A program made the position numbers and the translations under genes. A stretch of DNA of 64,000 nt from Macrostomum lignano (taxonomy: Eukaryota), in contig NIVC01000827.1 in assembly GCA_002269645.1 (NCBI GenBank), positions 269,233 through 333,232 of the forward strand, in the 5' to 3' direction. The notes under the pieces were generated by a model that saw only the letters and a program-made list of their open reading frames with translations, was not told where the DNA came from and did no database searches. Shown here in pieces: positions 27,632 to 62,508 of the stretch (position 1 is the first letter of the stretch; each line of letters begins with the position of its first letter).

Positions 27632-31450
<3,819 letters not shown>

Positions 31451-34852: not shown

Positions 34853-35059
34853 GTTCCTTCTTTCAGTATAATAATTGTTCAAATTAGTAGTTCAACCATT
34901 TTGTATTTTGTTAAACCCTCCGAATCCACGACTTGTGCCAAAGGATTTGGCCTTCAGTGTGAAATTTTTATAGTCTATGTTTATAAGGTCACCGATTTGA
35001 ATTGGACATCTTGTTTTTCGTTTGAGTTATTGCTGCTTCCGAATCAATCTGGCTATTGA

Positions 35060-35857: not shown

Positions 35858-35867
35858 ATTCTATGCC

Positions 35868-36080
<213 letters not shown>

Positions 36081-36501: not shown

Positions 36502-36509
36502 TATAACTA
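36502..36509 (+). promoter_or_regulatory. TATA-like box of gene A
   Basis: TATAACTA within a block (ctatactgctata...ccccagtccgcgagcttc) conserved with gene B, ~150 nt upstream of the ATG. Confidence 0.4.
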
Positions 36510-36657
36510 TGCTGCCGCCCCCAGTCCGCGAGCTTCTCCGACTTTCCAACACACGCCCAGTTCGAAAACTGCTATAGAAAATATCGTAGCAGTTCGCATT
36601 TTGTCGTTGAACAATCAACAACTGCAGGCTACTGTTTTGATTTGCTCAAGCAAGAGT

Positions 36658-39600
36658 ATGCTGCTGAAGGGCAGAGCTGCTGCGGTGAGCAGCTTGTTGC
36701 TGCTCGTTTTGCTTCTGGTTGGAACTCGCTGCCAAGCCAGACCAGTGCGAGGACCAGGTGAGTAGCACCTGATGTAGCAAACAGAGTAACAAATATTGTG
36801 CAAAACATCATAGCAACTACTTGATTGCTATGCACTTGAAGGACTTCCTTTGAAACCCGCAACTTTACAGAGTCTGAAGAGCACGAGGAATTTTATCCAG
36901 AAGAGGAAGAAGAGGAGTTTTTTCCCGGTAAAAAAGGAGGAAGTGTCGTTTCAGAAGAATGTGAGTAGTTTTTCGACAGTCCAATAAACATTAAAACGCG
37001 TTTAATAACTGCATTCACAACTGCGTAATGCTTGAATCGCTTCAGTGCTGAAAAAGCTCCTGGCCGGCCGAGATGAAGTGTCGCGGTCGTCAAAGGACAT
37101 CCAGAAAGGTAAATCTGTAAAAGAGATTTAGCACATTAAACTATTCAATTATTCTACAAGCTTGGAGCACCATTTTCGATCTGCAGGAAGGCGCAAATCC
37201 GATGGCAAAAACCCGAAGGTTGTGCCGCCCGCGAGGAAAAAGCGTAAGCCACAAATTCTGCATTTTCACTGTGAAATTCTTAGTAAAATTTGCTTTGTCT
37301 TTCAGTAGAGCGCAAAGTTCACAGCCTACCAAGAATTCACCCAAGCCGGAAAGTGGGCGGAAGCAGGAAGTCTGCGCCACCGGTGAGGAAAGGTAGGTCA
37401 GGAACTTTACCTGCATAATTTGGTTTTGCTCTTCTTGCCGTAAGACATGTTGGCGGAAAGAGTTCCCTACCAAAGAGTGAGTTTCAGATAACATCAGATA
37501 GCAAGCAAACATCAATCCAAATTGGCGGTTTCAGAGAAGAACCAAAAGAATCGTAGAATCGTTTTGGGAGGCTCCGAGAGCTCCCTGCCGCCTCAGTTTA
37601 GAAGTGAGTATCAGCGCCATGACTCACAATGGCGACATTTCTGACACACTAGCATGCAATTCATCAACAAGTTTGACTGTTTCAGAGAAGAACAAGAAGA
37701 GGATGATTGTAGGCGGCTCCGAGAGCTCCCTGCCGCCTCAGTTTAGAAGTGAGTATCAGCGCCATGACTCACAATGGCGACATTTCTGACACACTAGCAT
37801 GCAATTCATCAAGAAGTTTGACTGTTTCAGAGAAGAACAAGAAGAGGATGATTGTAGGCGGCTCCGAGAGCTCCCTGCCGCCTCAGTTTAGAAGTGAGTA
37901 TCAGCGCCATGACTCACAATGGCGACATTTCTGACACACTAGCATGCAATTCATCAAGAAGTTTGACTGTTTCAGAGAAGAACAAGAAGAGGATGATTGT
38001 AGGCGGCTCCGAGAGCTCCCTGCCGCCTCAGTTTAGAAGTGAGTATCAGCGCCATGACTCACAATGGCGACATTTCTGACACACTAGCATGCAATTCATC
38101 AAGAAGTTTGACTGTTTCAGAGAAGAACAAGAAGAGGATGATTGTAGGCGGCTCCGAGAGCTCCCTGCCGCCTCAATTCAGAAGTGAGTATCAGCGCCAT
38201 GACTAACAATGGCGACATTTCTGACACACTTTAGCATGAAATTGATCAACAAGTTTGACTGTTTCAGAGAAGAACAAGAAGAGGATGATTGTAGGCGGCT
38301 CCGAGAGCTCCCTACCGCCTCAGTTCAGAAGTGAGTATTAGCGCCATGACTCACAATGGCGACATTTCTGACACACTTTAGCATGAAATTGATCAAGAAG
38401 TTTGACTGTTTCAGAGAAGAACAAGAAGAGGATGATTGTAGGCGGCTCCGAGAGCTCCCTGCCGCCTCAGTTTAGAAGTGAGTATCAGCGCCATGACTCA
38501 CAATTGCGACATTTCTGACACACTTTAGCATGAAATTGATCAAGAAGTTTGACTGTTTCAGAGAAGAACAAGAAGAGGATGATTGTAGGCGGCTCCGAGA
38601 GCTCCCTGCCGCCTCAGTTTAGAAGTGAGTATCAGCGCCATGACTCACAATGGCGACATTTCTGACACACTAGCATGCAATTCATCAACAAGTTTGACTG
38701 TTTCAGAGAAGAACAAGAAGAGGATGATTGTAGGCGGCTCCGAGAGCTCCCTGCCGCCTCAGTTTAGAAGTGAGTATCAGCGCCATGACTCACAATGGCG
38801 ACATTTCTGACACACTAGCATGCAATTCATCAAGAAGTTTGACTGTTTCAGAGAAGAACAAGAAGAGGATGATTGTAGGCGGCTCCGAGAGCTCCCTGCC
38901 GCCTCAGTTTAGAAGTGAGTATCAGCGCCATGACTCACAATGGCGACATTTCTGACACACTAGCATGCAATTCATCAAGAAGTTTGACTGTTTCAGAGAA
39001 GAACAAGAAGAGGATGATTGTAGGCGGCTCCGAGAGCTCCCTGCCGCCTCAGTTTAGAAGTGAGTATCAGCGCCATGACTCACAATGGCGACATTTCTGA
39101 CACACTAGCATGCAATTCATCAAGAAGTTTGACTGTTTCAGAGAAGAACAAGAAGAGGATGATTGTAGGCGGCTCCGAGAGCTCCCTGCCGCCTCAGTTT
39201 AGAAGTGAGTATCAGCGCCATGACTCACAATGGCGACATTTCTGACACACTAGCATGCAATTCATCAAGAAGTTTGACTGTTTCAGAGAAGAACAAGAAG
39301 AGGATGATTGTAGGCGGCTCCGAGAGCTCCCTGCCGCCTCAGTTTAGAAGTGAGTATCAGCGCCATGACTCACAATGGCGACATTTCTGACACACTAGCA
39401 TGCAATTCATCAAGAAGTTTGACTGTTTCAGAGAAGAACAAGAAGAGGATGATTGTAGGCGGCTCCGAGAGCTCCCTGCCGCCTCAGTTTAGAAGTGAGT
39501 ATCAGCGCCATGACTCACAATGGCGACATTTCTGACACACTAGCATGCAATTCATCAACAAGTTTGACTGTTTCAGAGAAGAACAAGAAGAGGATGATTG

Positions 39601-42600
39601 TAGGCGGCTCCGAGAGCTCCCTGCCGCCTCAGTTTAGAAGTGAGTATCAGCGCCATGACTCACAATGGCGACATTTCTGACACACTAGCATGCAATTCAT
39701 CAAGAAGTTTGACTGTTTCAGAGAAGAACAAGAAGAGGATGATTGTAGGCGGCTCCGAGAGCTCCCTGCCGCCTCAATTCAGAAGTGAGTATCAGCGCCA
39801 TGACTAACAATGGCGACATTTCTGACACACTTTAGCATGAAATTGATCAACAAGTTTGACTGTTTCAGAGAAGAACAAGAAGAGGATGATTGTAGGCGGC
39901 TCCGAGAGCTCCCTACCGCCTCAGTTCAGAAGTGAGTATTAGCGCCATGACTCACAATGGCGACATTTCTGACACACTTTAGCATGAAATTGATCAAGAA
40001 GTTTGACTGTTTCAGAGAAGAACAAGAAGAGGATGATTGTAGGCGGCTCCGAGAGCTCCCTGCCGCCTCAGTTTAGAAGTGAGTATCAGCGCCATGACTC
40101 ACAATTGCGACATTTCTGACACACTTTAGCATGAAATTGATCAAGAAGTTTGACTGTTTCAGAGAAGAACAAGAAGAGGATGATTGTAGGCGGCTCCGAG
40201 AGCTCCCTGCCGCCTCAGTTTAGAAGTGAGTATCAGCGCCATGACTCACAATGGCGACATTTCTGACACACTAGCATGCAATTCATCAACAAGTTTGACT
40301 GTTTCAGAGAAGAACAAGAAGAGGATGATTGTAGGCGGCTCCGAGAGCTCCCTGCCGCCTCAGTTTAGAAGTGAGTATCAGCGCCATGACTCACAATGGC
40401 GACATTTCTGACACACTAGCATGCAATTCATCAAGAAGTTTGACTGTTTCAGAGAAGAACAAGAAGAGGATGATTGTAGGCGGCTCCGAGAGCTCCCTGC
40501 CGCCTCAGTTTAGAAGTGAGTATCAGCGCCATGACTCACAATGGCGACATTTCTGACACACTAGCATGCAATTCATCAACAAGTTTGACTGTTTCAGAGA
40601 AGAACAAGAAGAGGATGATTGTAGGCGGCTCCGAGAGCTCCCTGCCGCCTCAGTTTAGAAGTGAGTATCAGCGCCATGACTCACAATGGCGACATTTCTG
40701 ACACACTAGCATGCAATTCATCAAGAAGTTTGACTGTTTCAGAGAAGAACAAGAAGAGGATGATTGTAGGCGGCTCCGAGAGCTCCCTGCCGCCTCAATT
40801 CAGAAGTGAGTATCAGCGCCATGACTAACAATGGCGACATTTCTGACACACTTTAGCATGAAATTGATCAACAAGTTTGACTGTTTCAGAGAAGAACAAG
40901 AAGAGGATGATTGTAGGCGGCTCCGAGAGCTCCCTACCGCCTCAGTTCAGAAGTGAGTATTAGCGCCATGACTCACAATGGCGACATTTCTGACACACTT
41001 TAGCATGAAATTGATCAAGAAGTTTGACTGTTTCAGAGAAGAACAAGAAGAGGATGATTGTAGGCGGCTCCGAGAGCTCCCTGCCGCCTCAGTTTAGAAG
41101 TGAGTATCAGCGCCATGACTCACAATTGCGACATTTCTGACACACTTTAGCATGAAATTGATCAAGAAGTTTGACTGTTTCAGAGAAGAACAAGAAGAGG
41201 ATGATTGTAGGCGGCTCCGAGAGCTCCCTGCCGCCTCAGTTTAGAAGTGAGTATCAGCGCCATGACTCACAATGGCGACATTTCTGACACACTAGCATGC
41301 AATTCATCAACAAGTTTGACTGTTTCAGAGAAGAACAAGAAGAGGATGATTGTAGGCGGCTCCGAGAGCTCCCTGCCGCCTCAGTTTAGAAGTGAGTATC
41401 AGCGCCATGACTCACAATGGCGACATTTCTGACACACTAGCATGCAATTCATCAAGAAGTTTGACTGTTTCAGAGAAGAACAAGAAGAGGATGATTGTAG
41501 GCGGCTCCGAGAGCTCCCTGCCGCCTCAGTTTAGAAGTGAGTATCAGCGCCATGACTCACAATGGCGACATTTCTGACACACTAGCATGCAATTCATCAA
41601 CAAGTTTGACTGTTTCAGAGAAGAACAAGAAGAGGATGATTGTAGGCGGCTCCGAGAGCTCCCTGCCGCCTCAGTTTAGAAGTGAGTATCAGCGCCATGA
41701 CTCACAATGGCGACATTTCTGACACACTAGCATGCAATTCATCAACAAGTTTGACTGTTTCAGAGAAGAACAAGAAGAGGATGATTGTAGGCGGCTCCGA
41801 GAGCTCCCTACCGCCTCAGTTCAGAAGTGAGTATCAGCGCCATGACTCACAATGGCGACATTTCTGACACACTAGCATGCAATTCATCAAGAAGTTTGAC
41901 TGTTTCAGAGAAGAACAAGAAGAGGATGATTGTAGGCGGCTCCGAGAGCTCCCTGCCGCCTCAGTTTAGAAGTGAGTATCAGCGCCATGACTCACAATGG
42001 CGACATTTCTGACACACTAGCATGAAATTGATCAAGAAGTTTGACTGTTTCAGAGAAGAACAAGAAGAGGATGATTGTAGGCGGCTCCGAGAGCTCCCTG
42101 CCGCCTCAATTCAGAAGTGAGTATCAGCGCCATGACTAACAATGGCGACATTTCTGACACACTTTAGCATGAAATTGATCAAGAAGTTTGACTGTTTCAG
42201 AGAAGAACAAGAAGAGGATGATTGTAGGCGGCTCTGAGAGCTCCCTGCCGCCTCAATTCAGAAGTGAGTATCAGCGCCATGACTCACAATGGCGACATTT
42301 CTGACACACTAGCATGCAATTCATCAAGAAGTTTGACTGTTTCAGAGAAGAACAAGAAGAGGATGATTGTAGGCGGCTCCGAGAGCTCCCTACCGCCTCA
42401 GTTCAGAAGTGAGTATCAGCGCCATGACTCACAATGGCGACATTTCTGACACACTTTAGCATGAAATTGATCAAGAAGTTTGACTGTTTCAGAGAAGAAC
42501 AAGAAGAGGATGATTGTAGGCGGCTCCGAGAGCTCCCTACCGCCTCAGTTTAGAAGTGAGTATCAGCGCCATGACTCACAATGGCGACATTTCTGACACA

Positions 42601-45600
42601 CTTTAGCATGCAATTGTTCAAGAAGTTTGACTGTTTCAGAGAAGAACAAGAAGAGGATGATTGTAGGCGGCTCCGAGAGCTCCCTGCCGCCTCAGTTCAG
42701 AAGTGAGTATCAGCGCCATGACTCACAATGGCGACATTTCTGACACACTTTAGCATGCAATTCATCAAGAAGTTTGGCTGTTTCAGAGAAGAACAAGAAG
42801 AGGATGATTGTAGGCGGCTCCGAGAGCTCCCTACCGCCTCAGTTTAGAAGTGAGTATCAGCGCCATGACTTCTAAGCGTTTAAGAGTTACGCACGTTTTT
42901 AGCACACTGGACAGGGATTAAGGTAGTAGGCAGTAGCCAGGTGAGTGCGAAAAAAACTGGGAATCGACAAAAAGGACGCCGTAATCCCAGATGATGTCGA
43001 AGAAAAAAGGCAATATAATTCGTGAAACAAAATATGAAGCAAGGAGCGCTGATAGAGATTCAGTCGTCGAAGCTTGAGGCAGAAGTTTTGCCTTGACCTT
43101 ACATCTCGAGACTCTGTTGTGCTCCAAAAAGTTTTCTTTGGTTTCTTGAACGGTGCATGAAGCGATTGACTGGGTGAATTGCCATTTTCTGCAATTCATG
43201 CAGCAGTAAACCCTTAAGAGCGTTGAGGACATTTTTATTGATGATGGATCCGTGGTACGTGCGTTTATCTGCTTGAAAACTGGAAAAAGTGATGTATTTT
43301 AGCATCAGTCTCACTTTAAGCAGTCCAAAACAGTAGCCTAAGTTAGTGACTCAAGAAAGGACTCAAGATGGAACTCAGGACTCAAGGAAGGCAAGGCAAG
43401 ACTCTCTAAGACAATGTCGAGAACCCCTGGGAGTGGTGGTAGTTCCACAAATTCAACCTGGATGAGATGTCTGGGGGCTTCTTGTCCACTCGTCCGATCA
43501 GTGATTGATTGGCCTTCGGTCTGGTCCGGAGCTTCACTTCGGGCTCCTTTATGTCGATGAAGTTGACATCCTTTATGATACCATAGCTCGAGAGTCATTA
43601 TGAATCGATCAGCTGATCAATACTGCAGGTTCTGTGTCAGAAGAGGAGCGATCCAGCAAACGCTTCCCTTTGTCCGGATACGCAAAGGCCTCCAAGACTC
43701 CCGGGTCCAGAGGTGACAAGGACAAAGAGTTTAAAAGTGCGTCATAATTTGTCATACCCTGATAATTATTGTAGGACAGAATTTTCGTAGTTGAAAAAAC
43801 TCTGAAGAAAAATTCGAAAAAATCGATAAGCGATTTGGAATCAAAGTGACGGGCACCGGGAGCTCCCGACCGCCCCAGAATGGAAGTGAGTTGCGGTGGT
43901 CAATCTGTCAATCAAAGAAGACATTTCCAGTATCCTTAGGTCTTCAACTGCTCTGCCTCGTACTCCAGTTGATTTAAGATTCGAGTCGAACATTCGGCAG
44001 TTTAACCATTGTTAACTTTCCAAAACCATTGGAAAAGTCTGGCTTGGACGTTAGGAAACAGAAAGTTTTACTGTTTCTTTTAGCGACCCTCGAAAGGAAG
44101 GCAAGAATTTATACCGTGGACGACATAAATACCTGCATAAACGTGGGTCCACAAACACCCAGGGTGCGCAGATGTCCTCAGACAGCGAAAAATGTGGTGG
44201 CCGCTTGCACAATCGAATTCAGGGTCCTTAGTCCAAGTCTCAGGTGCTTCGTCTCTTCTAAAACAACCCAAAAAATTAAAATGCATTCAACTTTTCCAAG
44301 TGCACCCAGCTGACACTGAAACAAATGCAACTAAAACACTGCTACGCTTTAGAGAAGAACAAGAAGATCTCCAAGGCTCCTCAGGTGATCGTGGGCGGCT
44401 CTGAGAGCTCCCTGCCGCCTCAGTTTAGAAGTGAGATCCCTTTAATACTGCATCAGTTGTTATGATTTCAAAGCCAATCAAGAGCATCTGTGAACAAATA
44501 TGAGTCCGTTCATTCACTGCAGAGAAGCACCGCAAAGCCAAGAAGTCAGTTCCGAAGCCAGGCTCCTCGAAGGCCTCACTACCTCCCAAGAAACCCAAGA
44601 AGATTAAGAGTGAGTCTGTTTCTCCATTTTGCCGATTTTAAACCCTTGAATCAAGCAGTGTCTCCTGCGGTTGCAGAAATCGTCAGGCACCTTGGAATCA
44701 AAGCTGCTGAGCGCAAAAGTGAGTCTAAATTCTTCTAATTTTCTTTCGTTTTCCGAAATGATCTCATGTTAGCATGCACAGGCGACGCCCCTTGCGCGTA
44801 TGCGCTTGCAGAGCAGTCGAGAGGGGCAGGCAGCAGCAGCCTGAGGGGTCAGCGCAAGCGCTTGCAAGTCAGCGACGAGGCAATCAGTCAGAGTGACCAA
44901 GCGGGTCTGGCCGCTCCACAGTCGCTCGGTCGGCTGGTGCAGCAGGGCCAGGGCCAGAAGGACGGCCTCACCGCGGCCAAGGGCCCGTAGGCAGTCGCCC
45001 AGCAGCATTTGACGATGCCGGCGCAGGGTAGCGCTCACCAGCGCGGGCCATCAGAGCGTTGGTCGACATGCGCTCCAGATAGTGCACTCCAAGCGCGTAA
45101 CGCAGCAGCGATCGGTAGAGCGCGTCCAGGGCTCGCGCTCGCATCTGCGTCAGCGGCACAGCCTCCATGCCGTACAGAAGGATCGGCTCTACGACCGCGT
45201 GGAACAGGCACACCTTCAGGTCGTCTCTGGCAGCTGAAGTGAAGACGTTCATGAAGAAGGGAGCGCGCGTCGCGCCAGGCCTGGTTCCTCCTGTCGGAGA
45301 CAATGGCACCGGGTTTATCACCAGGGTGTCGAGGTACCGGAAGTCCTCGCACGTCGCGGTGCCGTCTCCTTTGGACAGCGTGAGATTTGGGGCGGTATTT
45401 GGGCCCTCGTGCAGCGCCTCCGTCTTGCGAGAATTCACCAGCAGCCCAAGACGGGCGCCCTCGTCGCCGAGTCTTGTGATAGTGCGCTGGGCAGCGGCTG
45501 GGTCGCGACAGAGCAGCGCGATTTCGTCAGCATATGCGAGAGCGGGAAGCAAAAGGAATCGAAGCAAAACGAGAGGGCGTCTGGACCTTCGGTGTAGAAT

Positions 45601-48600
45601 CAGTAGCTGTCATCCTCGTGGAAGGACTGATGCAGCGCATAAGTCCAAAACTACGAGGAAGCGCAGCAGAACCAGCATGTCGCCCTGAAGGACGCCTGGG
45701 CTGATGCCGAACTCTTCTTCTGGACCGCCGCCGCTTGACATGACAAAGGCACTGGAGTCAGGATAGAGATCTATCACTGCGTACGCGTAGCAGGTACGCC
45801 ATAATGAGATAGGAGCCACGCGATAGCTCTGTGGTGGATCCGCCCGGGCAGAAGCCACTTTGGAGGCTCAGCAGCAGTGGGTCGAGGCCGGGTTGGATGC
45901 CGTTGCGCAGAATTGCGTTCAGCAGCTATCTCGGCTGGTGGAGGCGCCTTTCTTTGAGATGGAGACAATATTGGAGGTCCGACATTGCTGAGGAGCTAAG
46001 GCGGCCTCGTTGCCTCCAAGGCTGCAGTGCTTGTTCAGCAGGCTGGTGATGATCGGGGTGAGCTCAGGCAGCTTCAGGACCCTGGGAGGGATGGCGTCCA
46101 CCCCAGCGGCGGCATCAGCTCGCATGGTCATCAGTGCTCGGCCAACCTCGCCTGCAGTGGTGGGGCCGGTGTCGAAGGCGCCTGATTGGACTGAAGCGAA
46201 GTCTGGGATCGGCAGGAGAGGCACAGTTGAAGCGGGCGCGTTGAGCACCTCGCGGTAGTGGGTGGCCAGCCGGGCCTTCCGGTGCTCGGTGGAATCAGCA
46301 CCGACGATGGTGTCGGGCTTCGGCTTCCTGCCGGTCAGCTGGTTGATGGCCCTTCTGGAAGCGCTATGGCGGCCGTTGTCAGTGGCGAGTTGGGTTTTGC
46401 TCACTGCCACTTCGATGAAGACTTCAGTCGCTGGGCATAGATGCGCTGCAGCTCGTCCGTGGCAGCACTGGCCTGGGCGCTGTCATGGCCGTGGAGGGCA
46501 GCAGTGCTCTCCTTCCCTTGGAGACGATGAGACTGCGGTCCCACAGAGCCTTTGGATGGTTTTCCTGTCTCCGTGGGAGAAGCGCTGCAGCATCCTCGAC
46601 GGCGTGATGGAAAGACTCGAAAGACTCGTTCAAAGAAATTTGGAAGCTTTCTGAGGCGCTTTCGCATGGTGCCATTGACAGCCATCAGATCTCTGGCCTG
46701 GAAAAAACTGGATAGGAAAGGTGAGTTGGCATTGGGGATGCCACAGCTGTTCTTCACCAGGCGGCCGTCGGCTGGAAATTGCGAGTTGAAATCCCCTGCA
46801 CCAAACTGTCGCCGATGTTCTTGAACTGCCAGGATGGAGACGTTGAGGTCAGCGGCCAGCCTTGTCAGCTCCTGCAGTCTCCATGTCTGACTGAGAGCGC
46901 GGGCATTGAAGGTGGCGACCCGAAGCTGGTCTTGAAGATGCGGCCGACTTGTGCCCTTGTTGGCTCTGCTTGTCACTGATCTCAGCAATGTACAGTGTTG
47001 CATTTGACTGAAAACACCAATAATTGTACTCCTTGAGAATAACAAGAAGATCTCCAAGGCTCCTCAGGTGGGCGGCTCCGTGAGCTCCCTGGCGCCTCAG
47101 TTTAGAAGTATAAGATCTGTTTAATACTGCATCAGTTGTTGTGATTTCCAAGCCAATCAAGAGCATCTGTAAACAAATATGAGTCCGGTCATTCACTGCA
47201 GAGAAGAAGCGCAAAGCCAAGAAGTCAGTTCCGAAGCCAGACTCCTCGAAGGCCTCACTACCTCCCAAGAAACCCAAGAAGATTAAGAGTGAGTCTGTTT
47301 CTCCATTTTGCCGATTTTAAACCCTTGAATCAAGCAGTGTCTCCTGTGGTTGCAGAAATCGTCAGGCACCTTGGAATCAAAGCTGCTGGGCAAAGTGAGT
47401 TTAGAGTATTCTAACTACATGTACCTTCGCTGTCACCTTCGATCTCGTAGTAATATTTCTACTTTGTAACAGAGAAGGAATATTGATTAAGGTGTTTGAC
47501 TGTTTCAGAGAATAACAAGAAGATCGCCAAGGCTCCTCAGGTGATCGTGGGCGGCTCCGAGAGCTCCCTGGCGCCTCAGTTCAGAAGTGAGATCCCTTTA
47601 TATTATTATATCAATTTTTTATTTCCAAGCCAATCAAGAGCATCTGGGAACAAATACGAGTATGAGTCCGGTCATTCACTGCAGAGAAGAACCGCAAAGC
47701 CAAGAAGTCAGTTCCGAAGCCAGGCTCCTCGAATGCCTCACTACCTCCCAGGAAACCCAAGAAGAATAAAAGTGAGTCTGTTTTCTGTTTTCGTTGGTGT
47801 CGACGAGAAGCGACGAGACACCCTATGCAGGTCCTTTCCAGGGTCCTTCCCTATGCAGGGCGCCCGACATGAGCCTCGAGTGAAGAGGGGGCCTTCTTAT
47901 AATAAAGTGGCGCCCCTGATGAAAGATTCTGGCTGTGCGCCTTGGCACAAGTCTGACTGCTTCATCATGTTTATTGCCCCTCGATGCATTTTGACCCAAA
48001 GGAGATGTAGCTAGATACTTGAAGTATTAAGAAAAGTTCCAGTGCTGTGTTGATACGAAAGGGAATAATAGTAAATACTTGAGCTAGCTCAATGTAATTT
48101 GGCTATAACTTCTTCATGAAATTACAGAGCAACAAATACTGCTTTCATTTTTGCTGCCTCAACGAACACGGTGCTTTAAGTTGACAAAAACTCTCTCTTT
48201 TATACCCACAATCCTCTGGGATTCCAAGGGAGTGACCTTGGATGGGATTCTCTATGTTTGCATCGGTGTCACGTTAAAAGTTCAGTCTGACGGACAGAGA
48301 ACCGCGCCGACTAAGCTCGGCCGTCCAAGTGACTTTCGGCCTTCTTAATCCCACTAGTGAAAATCGTCATTTTTATCGGTTTTTTATTTTTCAGAAAAGC
48401 AAAAGAAGAGGAAAATTTTATTCAGACACGTTCGCACCGGTGGCGATGAAAGCTCGACTTCAACTGGCTCTGGAAGTGAGTGCATGCCATCTATGCTCGT
48501 ATCCTCCCACATGCGATCACTCTTTTTCGAAAATTTTATTTTTACGAATCGTTCGGTTTTTTAGCACCTCGAAAAGTAAATATTGGGAAGAAGAAAAGAA

Positions 48601-49331
48601 TTCAAAAACACAAGGCCGGCGGAAGTGGCGTCAAAAAGACCGGTGGAAGTGGTGTCAAAAAGACCAGTGGAAGTGGCGTCAAAAAGGTTGGCGGAAGTGG
48701 CGTAAAAAATTCCAGTGGAAGTGGTGCCAAAAAGGCTGGCGGAAGTACCATCAAAAAGGTTGGCGGAAGTGGCGTCAAAAAGGCCGGCGGAAGTGGTGTC
48801 AAAAAGGCTGGCGGAAGTGGCGTCAAAACAGTTGGCGGAAGTGGCGTCAAAAAGACCAGTGGAAGTGGCGTCAAAAAGGTTGGCGGAAGTGGCGTCAAAA
48901 AGGTTGGCGGAAGTGGCGTCAAAAAGGCCGGCGGAAGTGGTGTCAAAAAGGCTGGCGGAAGTGGCGTCAAAACAGTTGGCGGAAGTGGCGTCAAAAAGAC
49001 CAGTGGAAGTGGCGTCAAAAAGGTTGGCGGAAGTGGCGTCAAAAAGGTTGGCGGAAGTGGCGTCAAAAAGGCCGCCGGAAGTGGCGTCAAAAAGGCCGGC
49101 GGAAGTGGCGTCAAAAAGGCCGCCGGAAGTGGCGTCAAAAAGGCCGGCAGAAGTGGCGTCAAAAAGGCCGCCGGAAGTGGCGTCAAAAAGGCCGGCGGAA
49201 GTGCCGTAAAAAATTCCAGTGGAAGTGGCGTCAAAAAGGCCGGTGGAAGTGGCGTCAAAAAGGCCGCCGGAAGTGGCGTTAAACCGGCCCCTCTGAAGGG
49301 ACCCAGCAAGGGAAAGGCGAACCAGCCTTAA
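36658..49331 (+). CDS. Gene A: secreted, highly basic repetitive protein / putative multi-copy peptide precursor (~1400 aa if all exons are used)
   Basis: Exon 36658-36757 encodes a signal peptide (MLLKGRAAAVSSLLLLVLLLVGTRCQA). Then phase-1 exons 36871-36960 (E-rich), 37046-37108, 37187-37243, 37306-37392, 37535-37603, 36 x 63-nt repeat exons (to 42849), 43629-43736, 44353-44430, 44523-44609, 44677-44718, 47202-47288, 47356-47394, 47509-47586, 47685-47771, 48395-48475 and 48565-49331 (stop). Every junction is GT-AG and in frame. AATAAA at 49620. Splicing in 42871-44340 is only partly resolved. Confidence 0.8.
37604..42871 (+). repeat. 145/147-bp exon-intron tandem array A (36 units)
   Basis: Donors GTGAGT at 37604, 37749, ... 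42850 (37 donors). Unit = 82/84-nt intron ending tttgactgtttcAG + 63-nt exon. Confidence 0.97.
44767..46976 (-). mobile_element. Degenerate non-LTR retrotransposon (LINE, RTE-like: AP endonuclease + reverse transcriptase) in an intron of gene A
   Basis: APE motif LRVATFNARAL...ILAVQEHR. RT motifs AAGVDAIPPRVLK, GVLQGD, LAYADEIALL, CEDFRYL and HAVVEPILLYGME, split over several frames. Candidate 8-bp TSD TGATCTCA at 44759-44766 and 46977-46984. Confidence 0.88.
48613..49283 (+). repeat. 24-bp coding minisatellite (~28 x GGSGVKKA-type octapeptide) in the last coding exon of gene A
   Basis: Unit ggcggaagtggcgtcaaaaaggcc. The frame is fixed by the phase-1 acceptor at 48564/48565. Confidence 0.9.
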
Positions 49332-50965
49332 GGTAGGTAGGCCGAAGGCATTACTTCCAAGGGTGTTGAACGCATTGTAAGCTGAGCAATGGCAAGCTGA
49401 TCCAATTCCTAATCTTCTCTTTCAGGTGCCGACTGTCGAAGTCAGAATTGCATTCTGCGAGGCTGATGATCCGAAACATGACCAGACAAAATATATTATT
49501 TTTTCTCGGTCCGGTCAAAGTGAACAAACATTTCCTTTCTCCCCGACAATTCACATCTAGTCGCTTATATTTTGAAAGTGCTGTCATCCTAACTACCATT
49601 ACGATGTTGAGCTGAAGAAAATAAAAGCCAGAATTTAATAATGAATTGTTTTGATTCCTAAACAGGCTGTGGTTATTCAAGCAAGTTTCAAAGAACCTAT
49701 ATGAATTATTTGCGTTATTTTAACTCTGGAAAATACTGAACGATGAAATTTCATAAATGGCAAATATTTGGTGAATCAATACTATGACCGCCAGTCAGTC
49801 AACAGTGGTTCGTATTATTCTAACAAAGCAGCCCCCCATCAGGCGCGTTCTCATTAGTCCCGAAGAAGTACACAAAGCACTTTAATGCAGAGTATTTCAG
49901 AGCACAAAAACGCTCGAAAACAAACAAATTTAATTATTCTAACAAAATCTAAATTATCATTTGTTCAGAAAGAATTAGTTTTTTGTTATTAATAACAAAG
50001 CGTTAAATTAAAAAATTAAATTTATTAAATCATAAACTAGATTTACATATTTCTATGTTGAATACAATCCTCGATTACTTCGGAAAGACAGCTTCTGGTT
50101 GTGAGTTCGTATAGTTCCTTCAAAGTTTAAATTAACAAAGTTGTGTAAATACTGCTAGAAAATGTGTAATTTGTGCTTCTTAACGTTAAAAATATGATAA
50201 ACATTTCACCAGAAGGAAAATTAATATTTCTCTACATGCGCTTTTTGACTCCCCAGATTTCACTTTAGCCGTGTGGAACCCGCCTGAGATGCTGTCTTTG
50301 CCTCATCATCACTCGCTTGACTGGCTGGCAAAGTAGGACTTCAGTGTTGTCGTTGGAAGGTTCTGACATTTTTAAACTCAGAACAAAAACTGAAGCAGCT
50401 AGTAGCAACTTTGGCGTCATTGTGACAGCAGAAGTGACAACGTATATAAAAAGCGATGGTTTATCCTTTGTCTCAACATTCGTGTGAGCATCGTGTAAAT
50501 TGCATCAGAATATCCCAGTGCGTGACAACGATTGACTGTCACGCAATCGTTGTCACGTGCTGCGACCGCTGATTCTTTGCATTGTTATGCTGCTTGACGA
50601 TTGTATTGTTCTGCATAAAAATGTGAATAATGATAGTCAAATTGCTAGACAATGAAAAACGCGCACATTAGGCGCAAAAACAACGCAGTAGTCAGAGACT
50701 GTTCATCAGAAGTTGCTCATTAAAACTGAAACGTGCAATCCTTGAAGTGACAGTTCTCGAATAAGCGAACTGCGCGTTCCGAATGCATCCGACCTGCAGA
50801 TTAATGGACATTGTAAAAATTCAGTTTCTATATAGCCATTAGTATAGCCACTAATTTACTTACAATGTTGACATATTATACTTACCATGCTTCACCCGCA
50901 TCTCCTGTGTCACCTCCACTGAAGCATACATGTAGGTCGCACGGGTCGGTCAGTCGTCGACACTA

Positions 50966-58262: not shown

Positions 58263-61200
58263 ATGCCGCTGAAGGGCAGAGCAGCTGCAGTGAGCAGCTT
58301 GTTGCTGCTCGTTTTGCTTCTGGTTGGCACTCGCTGCCAAGCCAGACCAGTTCCAGGATCAGGTGAGTATAAGCAGGCTTGGCTTGACTGACTACTCTAT
58401 GTAGCAAACAGAGTAACTAATATTGTGCTTGCATAGCAACACTTGATTACCGTACACTCGAAGGACCTCCTTTGAAACCCGCAACATTACAGAGTCTGAT
58501 GATGACCACGAGGAACTTTTTCCAGAAGAGGAAGAAGAGGAAGAAGAAGAAGAGCCTTCTACAGGTGAAGAAGGTGACGAGAGGCATGGAGGAGGAAGTG
58601 TCGTTACAGCAAGAAGTGAGTAACGGGTTTTCCACTGCTTAGCTCGTACTATTAAAGATGAAACTGGGTACTCTGTCCTAATAACAGCGGAATAATTGAA
58701 ACGCTTCAGTTCTGCAACAGCTCAAAACCAGCCGAGATGAAACCTCAAAAGACTTCCTAAAAGGTAAATGCAACAAATATGTCACAAAAAACAACCATTC
58801 AACACGCTCGAAGCGCCATTTATAGGCTGAAAGAAAAGCGCAAAACTACATTCAAAACGCAAAGGTTATGTAAGGCCACTAATCTAATGGGACATGGCGA
58901 CATTTCTGACACACTTTAGCATGAAATTGATCAAGAAGTTTGACTGTTTCAGAGAAGAACAAGAAGAGGATGATTGTAGGCGGCTCCGAGAGCTCCCTGC
59001 CGCCTCAGTTTAGAAGTGAGTATCAGCGCCATGACTCACAATGGCGACATTTCTGACACACTTTAGCATGAAATTGATCAAGAAGTTTGACTGTTTCAGA
59101 GAAGAACAAGAAGAGGATGATTGTAGGCGGCTCCGAGAGCTCCCTGCCGCCTCAGTTCAGAAGTGAGTATCAGCGCCATGACTCACAATGGCGACATTTC
59201 TGACACACTTTAGCATGAAATTGATCAAGAAGTTTGACTGTTTCAGAGAAGAACAAGAAAAGGATGATTGTAGGCGGCTCCGAGAGCTCCCTGCCGCCTC
59301 AGTTTAGAAGTGAGTATCAGCGCCACGACTCACAATGGCGACATTTCTGACACACTTTAGCATGCAATTGTTCAAGAAGTTTGACTGTTTCAGAGAAGAA
59401 CAAGAAGAGGATGATTGTAGGCGGCTCCGAGAGCTCCCTGCCGCCTCAGTTCAGAAGTGAGTATCAGCGCCATGACTCACAATGGCGACATTTCTGACAC
59501 ACTTTAGCATGAAATTGATCAAGAAGTTTGACTGTTTCAGAGAAGAACAAGAAGAGGATGATTGTAGGCGGCTCCGAGAGCTCCCTGCCGCCTCAGTTTA
59601 GAAGTGAGTATCAGCGCCACGACTCACAATGGCGACATTTCTGACACACTTTAGCATGCAATTGATCAAGAAGTTTGACTGTTTCAGAGAAGAACAAGAA
59701 GAGGATGATTGTAGGCGACTCCGAGAGCTCCCTGCCGCCTCAGTTCAGAAGTGAGTATCAGCGCCATGACTCACAATGGCGACATTTCTGACACACTTTA
59801 GCATGCAATTGATCAAGAAGTTTGACTGTTTCAGAGAAGAACAAGAAGAGGATGATTGTAGGCGGCTCCGAGAGCTCCCTGCCGCCTCAGTTTAGAAGTG
59901 AGTATCAGCGCCATGACTCACAATGGCGACATTTCTGACACACTTTAGCATGAAATTGATCAAGAAGTTTGACTGTTTCAGAGAAGAACAAGAAGAGGAT
60001 GATTGTAGGCGGCTCCGAGAGCTCCCTACCGCCTCAGTTCAGAAGTGAGTATCAGCGCCATGACTCACAATGGCGACATTTCTGACACACTTTAGCATGA
60101 AATTGATCAAGAAGTTTGACTGTTTCAGAGAAGAACAAGAAGAGGATGATTGTAGGCGGCTCCGAGAGCTCCCTACCGCCTCAGTTCAGAAGTGAGTATC
60201 AGCGCCATGACTCACAATGGCGACATTTCTGACACACTTTAGCATGAAATTGATCAAGAAGTTTGACTGTTTCAGAGAAGAATAAGAAAAGGATGATTGT
60301 AGGCGGCTCCGAGAGCTCCCTGCCGCCTCAGTTTAGAAGTGAGTATCAGCGCCACGACTCACAATGGCGACATTTCTGACACACTTTAGCATGCAATTGT
60401 TCAAGAAGTTTGACTGTTTCAGAGAAGAACAAGAAGAGGATGATTGTAGGCGACTCCGAGAGCTCCCTGCCGCCTCAGTTCAGAAGTGAGTATCAGCGCC
60501 ATGACTCACAATGGCGACATTTCTGACACACTTTAGCATGCAATTGATCAAGAAGTTTGACTGTTTCAGAGAAGAACAAGAAGAGGATGATTGTAGGCGG
60601 CTCCGAGAGCTCCCTGCCGCCTCAGTTTAGAAGTGAGTATCAGCGCCATGACTCACAATGGCGACATTTCTGACACACTTTAGCATGAAATTGATCAAGA
60701 AGTTTGACTGTTTCAGAGAAGAACAAGAAGAGGATGATTGTAGGCGGCTCCGAGAGCTCCCTACCGCCTCAGTTCAGAAGTGAGTATCAGCGCCATGACT
60801 CACAATGGCGACATTTCTGACACACTTTAGCATGAAATTGATCAACAAGTTTGACTGTTTCAGAGAAGAACAAGAAGAGGATGATTGTAGGCGGCTCCGA
60901 GAGCTCCCTACCGCCTCAGTTCAGAAGTGAGTATCAGCGCCATGACTCACAATGGCGACATTTCTGACACACTTTAGCATGAAATTGATCAAGAATTTTG
61001 ACTGTTTCAGAGAAGAACAAGAAGAGGATGATTGTAGGCGGCTCCGAGAGCTCCCTACCGCCTCAGTTTAGAAGTGAGTATCAGCGCCATGACTCACAAT
61101 GGCGACATTTCTGACACACTTTAGCATGAAATTGATCAAGAAGTTTGACTGTTTCAGAGAAGAACAAGAAAAGGATGATTGTAGGCGGCTCCGAGAGCTC

Positions 61201-62508
61201 CCTGCCGCCTCAGTTTAGAAGTGAGTATCAGCGCCATGACTCACAATGGCGACATTTCTGACACACTTTAGCATGAAATTGATCAACAAGTTTGACTGTT
61301 TCAGAGAAGAACAAGAAGAGGATGATTGTAGGCGGCTCCGAGAGCTCCCTGCCGCCTCAGTTCAGAAGTGAGTATCAGCGCCACGACTCACAATGGCGAC
61401 ATTTCTGACACACTTTAGCATGAAATTGATCAAGAAGTTTGACTGTTTCAGAGAAGAACAAGAAAAGGATGATTGTAGGCGGCTCGAGAGCTCCCTACCG
61501 CCTCAGTTTAGAAGTGAGTATCAGCGCCATGACTCACAATGGCGACATTTCTGACACACTTTAGCATGAAATTGATTAAGAAGTTTGACTGTTTCAGAGA
61601 AGAACAAGAAGAGGATGATTGTAGGCGGCTCCGAGAGCTCCCTGCCGCCTCAGTTTAGAAGTGAGTATCAGCGCCACGACTCACAATGGCGACATTTCTG
61701 ACACACTTTAGCATGAAATTTATCAAGAAGTTTGACTGTTTCAGAGAAGAACAAGAAGAGGATGATTGTAGGCGGCTCCGAGAGCTCCCTGCCGCCTCAG
61801 TTCAGAAGTAAGTATCAGCGCCATGACTCACAATGGCGACATTTCTGACACACTTTAGCATGAAATTGATCAAGAAGTTTGACTGTTTCAGAGAAGAACA
61901 AGAAGAGGATGATTGTAGGCGGCTCCGAGAGCTCCCTAACGCCTCAGTTTAGAAGTGAGTATCAGCGCCATGACTCACAATGGCGACATTTCTGACACAC
62001 TTTAGCATGAAATTGATCAACAAGTTTGACTGTTTCAGAGAAGAACAAGAAGAGGATGATTGTAGGCGGCTCCGAGAGCTCCCTGCCGCCTCAGTTTAGA
62101 AGTGAGTATCAGCGCCATGACTCACAATGGCGACATTCTGACACACTTTAGCATGCAATTGTTCAAGAAGTTTGACTGTTTCAGAGAAGAACAAGAAGAG
62201 GATGATTGTAGGCGGCTCCGAGAGCTCCCTACGCGCTCAGTTCAGGAGTGAGTATCAGCGCCATGACTCACAATGGCGACATTTCTGACACACTTTAGCA
62301 TGCAATTGTTCAAGAAGTTTGACTGTTTCAGAGAAGAACAAGAAGAGGATGATTGTAGGCGGCTCGAGAGAAACGAATCAAATAGAAGAAAAAAGTTCAA
62401 GTACACAAGGCCGGCGGAAATGGTGAGAAAAAGTCCGGCGGAGAGGTGCCAAAAGCAGCATCTGAAGGACCTAGCAAAGGAAAGCCGCAGGGCAAGCATC
62501 AGCCTTAA
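58263..62508 (+). CDS. Gene B: paralogue of gene A (signal peptide, E-rich exon, 23 repeat exons, short GG-K tail); may be disrupted
   Basis: Exons 58263-58362 (MPLKGRAAAVSSLLLLVLLLVGTRCQA), 58493-58615, 58710-58763, probably 58834-58869, then 23 repeat exons (58953-62247) and a fused last exon from 62332 homologous to the gene A tail (HKAGG...GPSKGK...QP TAA at 62506-62508). 1-nt deletions in exon 61452-61513 and in the last exon break the frame. AATAAA at 62882. Confidence 0.65.
58893..62370 (+). repeat. 147-bp exon-intron tandem array B (23 complete units + 1 partial)
   Basis: Donors at 59016, 59163, ... 62248; same unit as array A. Confidence 0.97.

What the first reader, a model, noticed from the sequence alone, without database searches (positions are those of the whole stretch)
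37535..42871. A 'satellite' that is really a tandem array of 36 exon+intron units encoding one 21-aa repeat per exon
Seen: each 145/147-bp unit splits into a GTGAGT...tttgactgtttcAG intron (82 or 84 nt) and a 63-nt phase-1 exon. Spliced, it reads KKNKKRMIVGGSESSLPPQFR 36 times, in frame with an upstream signal-peptide exon and a downstream stop. Length variants (+2 nt) occur only in the introns. All exon variants I could see in array A are synonymous in the spliced frame (CTG/CTA, CAG/CAA, TTT/TTC, TCC/TCT). Inference: purifying selection on a protein invisible to ORF finders and likely masked as a repeat.
Basis: partly seen in the sequence, partly recalled or inferred. Interest (0 to 1): 0.93.

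Follow-up and report, generated by a model that had tools for sequence, protein, structure and literature searches.

The report
Satellite-like array of spliced coding exons
What looks like a 145-bp satellite in the flatworm Macrostomum lignano is the middle of a real, expressed gene: 36 tandem mini-exon-plus-intron units are spliced into a secreted, very basic repeat protein whose peptides are already present in published mass-spectrometry data, while public transcript and gene models hold only collapsed or partial versions.

Summary
Window 37535-42871 holds one diverged 69-nt exon and 36 exons of 63 nt. Each is flanked by ...tttcAG and GTGAGT, separated by 82/84-nt introns, and open in one frame only. 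The four variable exon sites are all synonymous.

The array belongs to a gene of about 53 exons (36.5-49.6 kb, + strand). It has a TATA box, a signal-peptide exon, only phase-1 introns, a stop codon, a 3' exon and AATAAA. The predicted product is 1421 aa with pI 11.8.

The window is Macrostomum lignano. UniProt fragment A0A1I8ITX3 matches six of my predicted downstream exons 181/181.

Published footprint and pull-down mass spectrometry (Wunderer 2019) contains MIVGGSESSLPPQFR, two variant-exon peptides, and GGSVVSEELLK, which spans a predicted splice junction. The protein is therefore made.

Short-read transcripts hold two array units instead of 36. A copy in the Mlig_3_7 assembly has 10 units. 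A second, partly decayed paralogue (array B) lies at 58.3-62.5 kb.

The architecture, iterated exon-intron modules with homogenised introns, is known from spider silk genes, so this is a new member of a known kind. Function (extracellular polycation, possibly adhesive- or mucus-related) is inferred only.

The parts
36502..36507 (+). TATA box (TATAAC) of gene A. The inferred transcription start lies about 18-39 nt downstream (about 36520-36541).
   Evidence: The sequence is conserved with the gene B promoter. The start of the Mlig_3_7 gene model maps to about 36520. The length of the 709-nt transcript implies a start near 36541 (inference).
36658..36757 (+). Exon 1: ATG plus signal peptide MLLKGRAAAVSSLLLLVLLLVGTRCQA|RP. 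It ends in phase 1.
   Evidence: The h-region has GRAVY 2.66. Gene B differs by 3 aa in this exon's translation.
36871..36960 (+). Exon 2: acidic segment (SEEHEEFYPEEEEEEFFPGKKGGSVVSEE).
   Evidence: Peptide GGSVVSEELLK spans its junction with exon 3.
37046..37108 (+). Exon 3 (LKKLLAGRDEVSRSSKDIQK).
37187..37243 (+). Exon 4 (basic).
37306..37392 (+). Exon 5 (basic).
   Evidence: A 32-nt candidate at 37445-37476 breaks the phase and is not used.
37535..37603 (+). Exon 6: diverged 69-nt first unit (KNQKNRRIVLGGSESSLPPQFR).
37604..42870 (+). Array A: 36 units, each a 63-nt phase-1/phase-1 exon (first 37686-37748, last 42787-42849) plus an 82/84-nt intron. Every exon encodes KNKKRMIVGGSESSLPPQFR(K).
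   Evidence: The tryptic peptide mIVGGSESSLPPQFR appears in published mass spectrometry.
43629..43736 (+). Candidate exon, in phase (SVSEEERSSKRFPLSGYAKASKTPGSRGDKDKEFK). Its use is unproven.
43808..43885 (+). Candidate degenerate unit exon with a weak acceptor. Its use is unproven.
44353..44430 (+). Older paralogous unit exon (KNKKISKAPQVIVGGSESSLPPQFR).
   Evidence: Peptide APQVIVGGSESSLPPQFR is found by mass spectrometry.
44523..44609 (+). Exon (KHRKAKKSVPKPGSSKASLPPKKPKKIK).
   Evidence: It is contained in UniProt A0A1I8ITX3.
44677..44718 (+). Exon (IVRHLGIKAAERK).
44780..47000 (-). Degraded non-LTR retrotransposon fragment (RT remnant; APE-endonuclease-like ORF judged by eye only) inside the intron 44719-47508.
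   Evidence: ORFs. A weak RVT_1 hit. The region is GC-rich.
47202..47394 (+). Duplicate module exons 47202-47288 and 47356-47394. Their splice sites are intact, but the UniProt model skips them. They are optional or pseudo-exons.
47509..47586 (+). Unit-type exon (NNKKIAKAPQVIVGGSESSLAPQFR).
   Evidence: Peptide APQVIVGGSESSLAPQFR is found by mass spectrometry.
47685..47771 (+). Exon (KNRKAKKSVPKPGSSNASLPPRKPKKNK).
48395..48475 (+). Exon (KQKKRKILFRHVRTGGDESSTSTGSG).
48565..49331 (+). Last coding exon: 28 copies of the 8-aa repeat KAGGSGVK (a 24-bp coding minisatellite), ending in TAA at 49329-49331. The UniProt model instead uses an internal donor at 48696|48697.
49426..49625 (+). 3' exon after the intron 49333-49425, ending with AATAAA at 49620-49625. 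It is untranslated in my model and coding (ADCRSQNCILRG*) in the UniProt model.
   Evidence: It is conserved in gene B.
58263..62887 (+). Gene B, a paralogue.
- Exons 58263-58362, 58493-58615 and 58710-58763.
- 23 array units (58953...62247), one of them a 62-nt frameshifted exon at 61452-61513.
- A terminal unit fused to the 3' exon, with a stop near 62424.
- AATAAA at 62882-62887.

Best explanation
Array A is the central block of a protein-coding gene of Macrostomum lignano (window about 36.5-49.6 kb, + strand).

**How the units work.** Each 145/147-bp 'satellite' unit is a 63-nt exon plus an 82/84-nt intron. Every intron of the gene is in phase 1, so the spliceosome joins the units in frame. 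The product is a secreted protein of about 1,400 aa, pI about 11.8 and 20% lysine, predicted to be disordered. It reads: signal peptide, one acidic exon, basic exons, (KKNKKRMIVGGSESSLPPQFR) x 36, older diverged unit exons, then (KAGGSGVK) x 28.

**How the array arose.** It grew by duplication of whole exon-intron modules, and unequal crossing-over or gene conversion keeps it homogeneous. The signs are higher-order blocks and copy numbers of 36, 23 and 10 in three copies. Selection on the peptide filters exon changes in gene A.

**Shown versus inferred.**
- Shown: anatomy, frame continuity, transcription, splicing at several junctions, and translation.
- Inferred: all 36 units are included in the mature mRNA.
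- Inferred with low confidence (about 0.3): the protein acts outside the cell as a polycation that binds polyanionic glycans or surfaces (mucus, adhesive or cohesive secretion). This would resemble the lysine/arginine-rich regions of the same animal's adhesive protein Mlig-ap1.
For: **Anatomy and frame**
- Unit structure, splice signals and single open frame.
- One unbroken frame of 1421 aa through 53 exons, all internal ones multiples of 3 and phase 1-1, from signal peptide to TAA.
- Conserved TATA box, 3' exon and AATAAA in both paralogues.

**Constraint on the exon**
- Four of four exon variants in array A are synonymous (P about 0.002-0.006). All seven synonymous sites of A and B are third positions.
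- Older unit exons keep 92-95% identity over 40 nt next to introns at shuffle-level identity.
- Window versus the Mlig_3_7 copy: exon divergence 1.3% with no indels, intron 2.4% with indels, 3 synonymous and 3 non-synonymous changes.

**Species and independent models**
- The Delta-like neighbour is 98% identical to an M. lignano protein.
- UniProt A0A1I8ITX3 is 181/181 identical to my splice of six downstream exons plus the 3' exon.
- The Mlig_3_7 annotation has a same-strand gene (669 aa) starting just downstream of the TATA box and spanning a 10-unit array.

**Protein-level evidence (PMC6410801 supplements)**
- mIVGGSESSLPPQFR with MH+ 1620.81, against a calculated 1620.805.
- APQVIVGGSESSLPPQFR, APQVIVGGSESSLAPQFR, and GGSVVSEELLK, which spans junction 36960|37046.
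- The reported coverage values imply that each transcript translation holds two array units in frame.
Against: - No read-level evidence shows that all 36 units are spliced in. Public short-read transcripts carry two units.
- The selection test rests on four to ten variable sites. Exon and intron variable-site densities in array A do not differ significantly (Fisher P = 0.39).
- The Mlig_3_7 copy and array B carry non-synonymous changes (G to A, G to D, P to F, P to T). Array B has a frameshifted exon.
- The array peptide lies within one exon, so it does not itself prove unit-to-unit splicing.
- The footprint and pull-down lists also hold vitellogenin, HSP70, ribosomal proteins, GAPDH and tektin. 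Presence there says nothing specific about function.
- No homologue or domain gives a functional handle.
Confidence: 0.85

Rival explanations
1. Polyprotein precursor. The product is cut by proprotein convertases at the basic clusters (KKNKKR|M and FR|KK) and trimmed by carboxypeptidase. This would release about 36 copies of a 14-15-aa peptide, MIVGGSESSLPPQF(R), acting as a signalling, antimicrobial or seminal peptide.
For: - The protein has a signal peptide, an acidic N-terminal exon, and 36 identical short peptides each flanked by KR and RKK.
- Amino-acid identity is strict despite synonymous variation.
Against: - There is no Gly for amidation before the basic cluster.
- The rest of the protein is also strongly basic repeat (KAGGSGVK x 28 and K/P-rich exons) rather than acidic spacer.
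- Variant unit exons have K|APQV... instead of KR|M.
- The detected peptides are ordinary tryptic products and cannot discriminate between the two readings.
Confidence: 0.12
2. Only a few units are used. The mature mRNA carries one to three array exons. The rest of the array is skipped as one long intron or as alternative cassettes, so most of the array is effectively non-coding.
For: - Public transcripts (709 nt and 1043 nt) hold two units each.
- All exons are phase 1-1, so skipping is frame-neutral.
- The UniProt model skips intact-looking exons at 47202 and 47356.
Against: - Short-read assemblers collapse 63-nt perfect repeats, so two units is the expected artefact.
- All 36 units keep identical strong AG/GTGAGT sites.
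- Variation across all units of array A is synonymous only. That would not be expected of exons that are never translated.
Confidence: 0.1
3. The array is an ordinary non-coding satellite, and its open frame and splice-like signals are fortuitous.
For: The unit length of 145-147 bp, the higher-order repeat blocks and the copy-number variation are typical of satellites.
Against: - The frame is continuous with a signal-peptide exon and a stop codon.
- The peptide encoded by the unit is detected by mass spectrometry.
- Transcripts join the unit to flanking exons in frame.
- Exon-specific conservation appears in the diverged copies.
Confidence: 0.01
4. The protein is a linker-histone-like nuclear protein, as the UniProt name 'H15 domain-containing protein' suggests.
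For: The UniProt automatic name and the lysine-rich composition.
Against: - No Linker_histone or other Pfam hit at E <= 1.
- A canonical N-terminal signal peptide is conserved in both paralogues.
- The UniProt entry is a fragment that lacks the N-terminus.
Confidence: 0.02

Closest known systems
Spider silk genes with iterated exon-intron modules (flagelliform spidroin; Argiope MaSp2.1a/MaSp2.2; PMC9779670)
   Same: - A repetitive secreted structural protein in which each repeat unit is bounded by introns.
- The introns are nearly identical within a gene (about 97% there; 96.5-97.9% here).
- Whole modules are homogenised and change in number.
- Paralogues lie in a cluster.
   Different: - The unit here is tiny (21 aa; 63-nt exon plus 82-nt intron) and looks like a 145-bp satellite, rather than ensemble repeats of hundreds of bases.
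- The composition is basic K/S/G/P, not Gly/Ala/Pro.
- The host is a flatworm.
- There is no sequence homology.
Mlig-ap1, adhesion protein 1 of M. lignano (PMC6410801, PMC8621496)
   Same: - Same species.
- Secreted, with very large low-complexity lysine/arginine-rich repeat regions carrying extreme positive charge.
- Found in the same footprint mass-spectrometry sheet.
   Different: - Mlig-ap1 is 5,407 aa with a core of C-type lectin, vWD, C8, TIL and EGF domains. None is present here.
- The repeat sequence is different.
- No homology has been shown.
- No expression or RNAi data exist for this gene.
Multi-copy peptide precursors, such as cnidarian RFamide and molluscan FMRFamide precursors (from general knowledge, not tested here)
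   Same: A signal peptide followed by tens of identical short peptides flanked by basic residues.
   Different: - Those copies usually lie within one or a few exons.
- They end in Gly for amidation and are separated by acidic spacers.
- Here there is one copy per exon, no Gly, and basic surroundings.
Genes built of small exons bounded by same-phase introns, such as tropoelastin and the titin PEVK region (from general knowledge)
   Same: Many short exons whose lengths are multiples of three and whose bounding introns share one phase. Exons can therefore be duplicated or skipped without breaking the frame.
   Different: In those genes neither exons nor introns are near-identical tandem copies, and they do not register as a satellite.
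Classical tandem satellite DNA with units of about 145-170 bp
   Same: Unit length, head-to-tail array, higher-order repeat blocks and copy-number differences between copies.
   Different: This array is transcribed, spliced and translated, and it shows third-codon-position variation.

Membership tests
Iterated exon-intron repeat genes with homogenised introns (an architecture class, as in Flag/MaSp2 spidroins) | Each protein repeat unit is bounded by introns at the same position and phase. | tested here: met
   36 exons of 63 nt, all AG|...|GTGAGT, all phase 1-1.
Iterated exon-intron repeat genes with homogenised introns (an architecture class, as in Flag/MaSp2 spidroins) | The iterated introns are nearly identical within the gene. 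| tested here: met
   Mean pairwise intron identity is 96.5% in array A and 97.9% in array B.
Iterated exon-intron repeat genes with homogenised introns (an architecture class, as in Flag/MaSp2 spidroins) | The units are spliced together in the mature mRNA. | tested here: inconclusive
   Transcript translations of 236 and 347 aa carry two units in frame with flanking exons. This is inferred from the coverage values. No full-length read covers the 36 units.
Secreted protein (classical pathway) | An N-terminal signal peptide with a charged n-region, a hydrophobic h-region and small residues at -3 and -1. | tested here: met
   MLLKGR / AAAVSSLLLLVLLLVG (GRAVY 2.66) / TRCQA|RP, judged by inspection. 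No SignalP was available. The sequence is conserved in gene B.
Multi-copy neuropeptide or peptide precursor | Repeated peptides flanked by dibasic cleavage sites. | tested here: met
   KKNKKR|MIVGGSESSLPPQF|RKK occurs 36 times.
Multi-copy neuropeptide or peptide precursor | A C-terminal Gly amidation signal and/or acidic spacers between the copies. | tested here: not met
   There is no Gly before the basic cluster, and the spacers are basic.
Multi-copy neuropeptide or peptide precursor | The free mature peptide is detected in vivo. | not testable with these tools
   Only tryptic digests are available.
Linker histone H1/H5 (the UniProt label 'H15 domain-containing') | A globular winged-helix H15 domain (Pfam Linker_histone). 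| tested here: not met
   No such hit at E <= 1 in the 749-aa short form, which includes all of the A0A1I8ITX3 residues except its last 12 (the ADCRSQNCILRG tail).
Mlig-ap1-like flatworm adhesive protein | A core of C-type lectin, vWD/C8/TIL and EGF domains flanked by KR-rich regions. | tested here: not met
   Pfam finds no domain. Only the polycationic low-complexity character is shared.
Mlig-ap1-like flatworm adhesive protein | Expression in adhesive gland cells and a non-adhesion phenotype on RNAi. | not testable with these tools
   Peptides occur in the footprint sheet, but alongside many housekeeping proteins.
Calpastatin (Pfam Calpain_inhib) | A score above the Pfam gathering threshold. 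| tested here: not met
   18 bits against a cut-off of 22, and no single stretch passes.
Non-coding satellite DNA | No coding capacity or protein product. | tested here: not met
   The unit-encoded peptide is found by mass spectrometry, and the frame is continuous.
Intron-hosted small RNA cluster (snoRNA or mirtron arrays) | The intron matches an RNA family or folds markedly better than shuffles. | tested here: not met
   No Rfam hit at E <= 1 in 36000-50000. Intron folding z-scores are -0.2 and -1.4.

The most novel reading that the evidence does not exclude
The protein may be an overlooked, abundant polycationic component of the flatworm's surface secretion, either the adhesive footprint or mucus. 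Two mechanisms would tune its length, and so its charge and valency: the copy number of the exon-intron array (10, 23 and 36 units in three copies) and frame-neutral exon skipping. It would have escaped notice because short-read transcripts collapse it to two units.
Probability: 0.2. Interest if true: 0.6.

Novelty: new member of a known kind. Interest (0 to 1): 0.42.

Why it matters
**Annotation.** This is a clean, protein-verified case of a 145-bp 'satellite' that is really coding. Repeat masking, short-read transcript assembly and word-based protein searches all under-represent it:
- public transcripts hold two units instead of 36;
- the UniProt entry is a fragment with a misleading 'H15' name;
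- my own first protein search missed it.

In a tandem-repeat-dense region such as this window, other coding arrays could be hidden in the same way.

**Flatworm bioadhesion.** The work defines the full structure of a polycationic secreted protein of about 154 kDa. Its peptides already sit unremarked in the footprint and lectin pull-down datasets, next to Mlig-ap1, whose positive charge is central to the current adhesion-release model.

**Evolution.** The gene offers a compact system for studying concerted evolution of exon-intron modules. Three copies with different unit numbers are available, and one of them is decaying.

Tried and rejected
**Protein searches**
- The spliced 749-aa short form gave no hit. 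UniProt A0A1I8ITX3 shares 169 identical residues with the query, and a local phmmer run finds the N-terminus at E = 1e-40. The empty result is not evidence of absence.
- A cadherin exon used to identify the organism gave only 27-30% hits. The Delta-like ORF succeeded.
The results were mostly low-complexity noise plus one true hit.
- Pfam found no family. Sub-threshold Calpain_inhib and AMIN hits were rejected.

**DNA and RNA searches**
- A degenerate DNA pattern for MIVGGSESSLPPQF found nothing in metagenome or GTDB genome contigs.
- Rfam found nothing over 36000-50000, and intron folding was unremarkable. Intron-hosted small RNAs are rejected.

**Exact look-ups and literature**
- Exact look-ups of the last-exon ORF and of P0177 on contigs found nothing on record.
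- The transcript ids were not found in the main text of any paper, nor in the supplements of Arbore 2015, Weber 2018 or Grudniewska 2016. The expressing tissue remains unknown.
- A full-text search for the peptide sequence found nothing.

**Gene-model candidates rejected**
- The 32-nt candidate exon at 37445-37476 breaks the phase.
- The 36-nt candidate exon at 58834-58869 in gene B creates a junction stop.

Full report
**1. Observation**

Tandem Repeats Finder reports window 37570-42870 as a 145-bp repeat with 36.4 copies and 97% matches. It reports a related 147-bp array at 58894-62370 with 23.7 copies.

Cutting the first array at the motif tttcAG|AGAAGAAC gives unit lengths of 145 or 147 bp. 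Every unit splits into two parts:
- a 63-nt segment bounded by ...tgtttcAG and GTGAGT;
- an 82- or 84-nt segment that starts GTGAGT and ends tttgactgtttcAG.

The array is preceded by a diverged 69-nt copy at 37535-37603.

Of the three forward frames of the 63-nt segment, two carry stops. The third reads KNKKRMIVGGSESSLPPQFR, and the leftover A joins the next unit's AG to give K. The introns are therefore in phase 1.

No unspliced ORF in the array exceeds 61 aa, and none of 40 aa or more lies on the minus strand.

A multiple alignment of the units shows four variable exon sites in array A: TCC/TCT, CTG/CTA, CAG/CAA and TTT/TTC. All are third positions and all are synonymous. The intron has nine substitution sites and the +2-nt indel.

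**2. Gene model**

Upstream of the array I found five exons with canonical GT/AG borders: 36658-36757, 36871-36960, 37046-37108, 37187-37243 and 37306-37392. Apart from the first, each has a length that is a multiple of three, and all five end in phase 1. They read MLLKGRAAAVSSLLLLVLLLVGTRCQA|RP..., a textbook signal peptide, followed by an acidic stretch and then basic stretches.

A scan for phase-1/phase-1 open exons with good splice sites downstream of the array recovers:
- older, diverged copies of the unit (44353-44430 and 47509-47586);
- K/P-rich exons (44523-44609 and 47685-47771);
- short exons (44677-44718 and 48395-48475);
- a last coding exon, 48565-49331, that contains a 24-bp coding minisatellite (KAGGSGVK x 28) and ends in TAA.

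The stop is followed at once by a donor (AAG|GTAGGT), a 93-nt intron, a further exon from 49426, and AATAAA at 49620-49625.

The whole chain is one open frame of 1421 aa, with pI 11.8 and 20% Lys.

A degraded non-LTR retrotransposon lies in the intron between 44718 and 47509.

A TATA box at 36502-36507 sits upstream of the gene.

**3. A second gene**

Array B belongs to a paralogue (58263 to about 62887). It shares the promoter, 5' UTR, signal-peptide exon, acidic exon, 3' exon and poly(A) signal.

Its 23 units keep all splice sites, but several are damaged:
- two carry G to D, one P to T and one PP to RA;
- one exon has lost a base (62 nt, 61452-61513);
- the last unit is fused to the terminal exon out of the ancestral frame.

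In array B the exons are more variable than the introns (96.7% against 97.9% identity). In array A the opposite holds (98.3% against 96.5%).

Gene B therefore looks relaxed or decaying. Alternatively, some of these differences could be assembly errors in a CC homopolymer.

**4. Is there selection?**

Homogeneity of the array is explained by concerted evolution. The unit types show a recurring four-unit block, aaa[bcde]aaaaaea[bcde]aea[bcde]....

The signal of constraint is the kind of variation that survives.
- *Array A.* 21% of all single-base changes in the exon would be synonymous, and 33% of transitions. Four of four synonymous has P of about 0.002-0.006.
- *Arrays A and B together.* Seven synonymous sites, all at third positions, stand against three non-synonymous sites and one frameshift. 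This gives P of about 0.001-0.006.
- *Variable-site density.* Exon and intron densities in array A do not differ significantly (P = 0.39).
- *Older unit exons.* Independent support comes from the exons at 37535, 44353 and 47509. Their last 40 nt are 92-95% identical to the array exon, and in the 44353 copy both differences are synonymous. Their flanking introns are at shuffle level (0.54-0.67 against a shuffle mean of 0.56).
- *Comparison with the Mlig_3_7 copy.* The 5' exons differ at 6 of 466 sites (3 synonymous, 3 non-synonymous, no indels). The introns differ at 14 of 577 sites plus 13 nt of indels. This gives dN/dS of roughly 0.3.

Purifying selection is supported. It is moderate, and it rests on small counts.

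**5. Organism and independent models**

The spliced protein and a cadherin exon gave no close hit.

The Delta-like ORF at 25340-26407 (minus strand) is 98% identical to BOX15_Mlig025798g1 of Macrostomum lignano.

Its contig in assembly Mlig_3_7 (GCA_002269645.1, NIVC01003555.1) is collinear with the window at 93-97% identity. There the array has one diverged unit plus ten 63-nt units, with some non-synonymous variants. On that contig a called gene on the matching strand encodes a 669-aa product. It starts about 18 nt downstream of the TATA box and runs through the array.

An exhaustive HMMER search with the last exon found UniRef100_A0A1I8ITX3, an M. lignano fragment of 181 aa named 'H15 domain-containing protein'. 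I spliced window exons 44523-44609, 44677-44718, 47509-47586, 47685-47771, 48395-48475 and 48565-48696, then continued from 49426. The translation reproduces the UniProt entry 181/181.

This has three consequences:
- The window is M. lignano, and an independent model uses exactly my junctions.
- That model lacks the signal peptide and the whole array. It skips the 47202 and 47356 exons, and it splices most of the KAGGSGVK repeat out.
- The empty result was a prefilter failure, as the local phmmer test confirms.

The 'H15' name has no support from Pfam.

**6. Protein-level evidence**

The array unit should yield the tryptic peptide MIVGGSESSLPPQFR. Its calculated MH+ is 1604.81, or 1620.805 with oxidised Met.

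The supplementary datasets of Wunderer et al. 2019 (PMC6410801) contain the following.

*Sheet footprints_Trypsin_intact_1 of sd02:*
- mIVGGSESSLPPQFR (MH+ 1620.81), APQVIVGGSESSLPPQFR (exon 44353) and APQVIVGGSESSLAPQFR (exon 47509). These are assigned to the translation of a 1043-nt transcript (347 aa, pI 12.1).
- mIVGGSESSLPPQFR plus GGSVVSEELLK. These are assigned to RNA1509_18906 (= RNA815_30685 = RNA1310_53363.1; 709 nt, 236 aa).

*sd01.xlsx, the first dataset file, which by the main text's numbering (Dataset S1) is the PNA-lectin pull-down:*
- mIVGGSESSLPPQFR again.

GGSVVSEELLK spans the exon 2/exon 3 junction at 36960|37046. Read-through of that donor would give ...SEECE followed by a stop.

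The reported coverages fit two copies of the array peptide per translation:
- 17.37% of 236 aa is 41 aa, which equals 11 + 2 x 15;
- 19.02% of 347 aa is 66 aa, which equals 18 + 18 + 2 x 15.

So the short-read transcripts join array units to each other and to the flanking exons in frame, but collapse 36 units to two.

The same lists include vitellogenin, HSP70, ribosomal proteins, GAPDH and tektin. Detection there proves that the protein exists. It does not prove that the protein is an adhesive.

The transcript ids appear in no main text and in none of the three supplements I could check.

**7. What it most likely is and does**

*Shown:* a transcribed, spliced and translated gene whose central part is a tandem array of exon-intron modules.

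*Inferred:* all 36 units are included. They have identical strong splice sites and only synonymous variation. The two-unit transcripts are the expected assembly artefact.

*Function is inference.* The protein is a secreted, disordered polycation, with about +4.5 net charge per 21-aa unit at pH 7.5. In the same animal, the cohesive adhesive protein Mlig-ap1 owes its proposed mechanism to huge lysine/arginine-rich regions that interact with negatively charged sugars. An extracellular charge-based role in mucus, adhesion, cohesion or egg attachment is the best guess, at about 0.3.

The main rival is a polyprotein cut at KR/RKK to release about 36 copies of a 14-15-mer. It fits the unit but not the rest of the protein, and there is no amidation glycine.

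Intron-hosted small RNAs are excluded as far as Rfam and folding can tell.

**8. Comparison with the known, and novelty**

Genes whose repeat units are bounded by iterated, homogenised introns are documented in spider silk (flagelliform spidroin and Argiope MaSp2). According to that paper they also occur in several other proteins (PMC9779670). The present gene has the same architecture at a much smaller scale, which makes it register as a 145-bp satellite.

It has no detectable homologue or domain.

It already exists in public data as uncharacterised, collapsed transcripts and partial models. I found no description of the 36-unit structure or of the full-length protein.

I file it as a new member of a known kind. 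It is of moderate interest. It serves as an annotation lesson, and it gives M. lignano adhesion research an unexamined polycationic protein.

Noticed in passing
window 58263-62887 (+): A tandem paralogue (gene B) with 23 units. It has the same promoter, signal peptide and 3' exon. One array exon is frameshifted to 62 nt (61452-61513), several changes are non-synonymous, and the last unit is fused out of frame to the terminal exon. In this copy the exons vary more than the introns.
   Followed up: yes
L002 1-3400 (Mlig_3_7 contig NIVC01003555.1) versus window 35053-43577: A collinear copy at 93-97% identity has only 10 + 1 units instead of 36 + 1. It carries G to A (3 units) and P to F (1 unit) changes. 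Whether it is a paralogue from the recent genome duplication, an allele or a collapsed assembly is open.
   Followed up: partly
window 48565-49331 and 49426-49470: There are two possible C-termini. One is the full KAGGSGVK x 28 repeat ending ...KGKANQP*. The other, used by UniProt A0A1I8ITX3, takes a weak internal donor GGAA|GTGGCG at 48696 and reads into the downstream exon as ...GGSADCRSQNCILRG*. The second may be an artefact of modelling around the 24-bp repeat.
   Followed up: partly
window 44780-47000 (-): A degraded non-LTR retrotransposon (a reverse-transcriptase remnant confirmed by a weak RVT_1 hit, plus an APE-endonuclease-like ORF judged by eye, both with stops) is inserted in an intron of gene A. 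It lies next to a partly disabled duplicate of a three-exon module (47034-47394).
   Followed up: partly
repeat peptide, e.g. window 37686-37748: The unit carries ...KR|MIVGGSES.... From memory, this recalls the R|IVGG activation site at the N-terminus of trypsin-like proteases. It also carries LPPQFR, which gives a sub-threshold Pfam Calpain_inhib hit (18 bits against a cut-off of 22). Both may be chance.
   Followed up: no
The word-indexed protein search returned nothing for the spliced query, although a database protein (A0A1I8ITX3) shares 169 identical residues with it. Negative results of that tool for K-rich repeats are unreliable.
   Followed up: yes
window 2773-3816 (+): A 21-bp minisatellite (2787-3401, 29 copies) lies inside an ORF. 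It reads as PQVQSES heptads and continues into a leucine-rich-repeat region (Pfam LRR_4 and LRR_8). This may be another coding tandem repeat.
   Followed up: no
window 27632-31450: A 3.8-kb (GACA)n microsatellite of about 955 copies. The window as a whole is unusually dense in minisatellites with units of 10-43 bp.
   Followed up: no
window about 32030-34850 (-), from L002 5028-7872: The Mlig_3_7 annotation places a tetraspanin gene here, divergently oriented to gene A. The 19-bp x 55 and 43-bp x 14 minisatellites lie within its span.
   Followed up: no
window 8623-18640 (+) and 25340-26407 (-): Neighbouring genes: a large multi-cadherin-repeat gene with exons of 1.2-1.9 kb and about 60% GC, and a Delta-like DSL/EGF gene.
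   Followed up: partly
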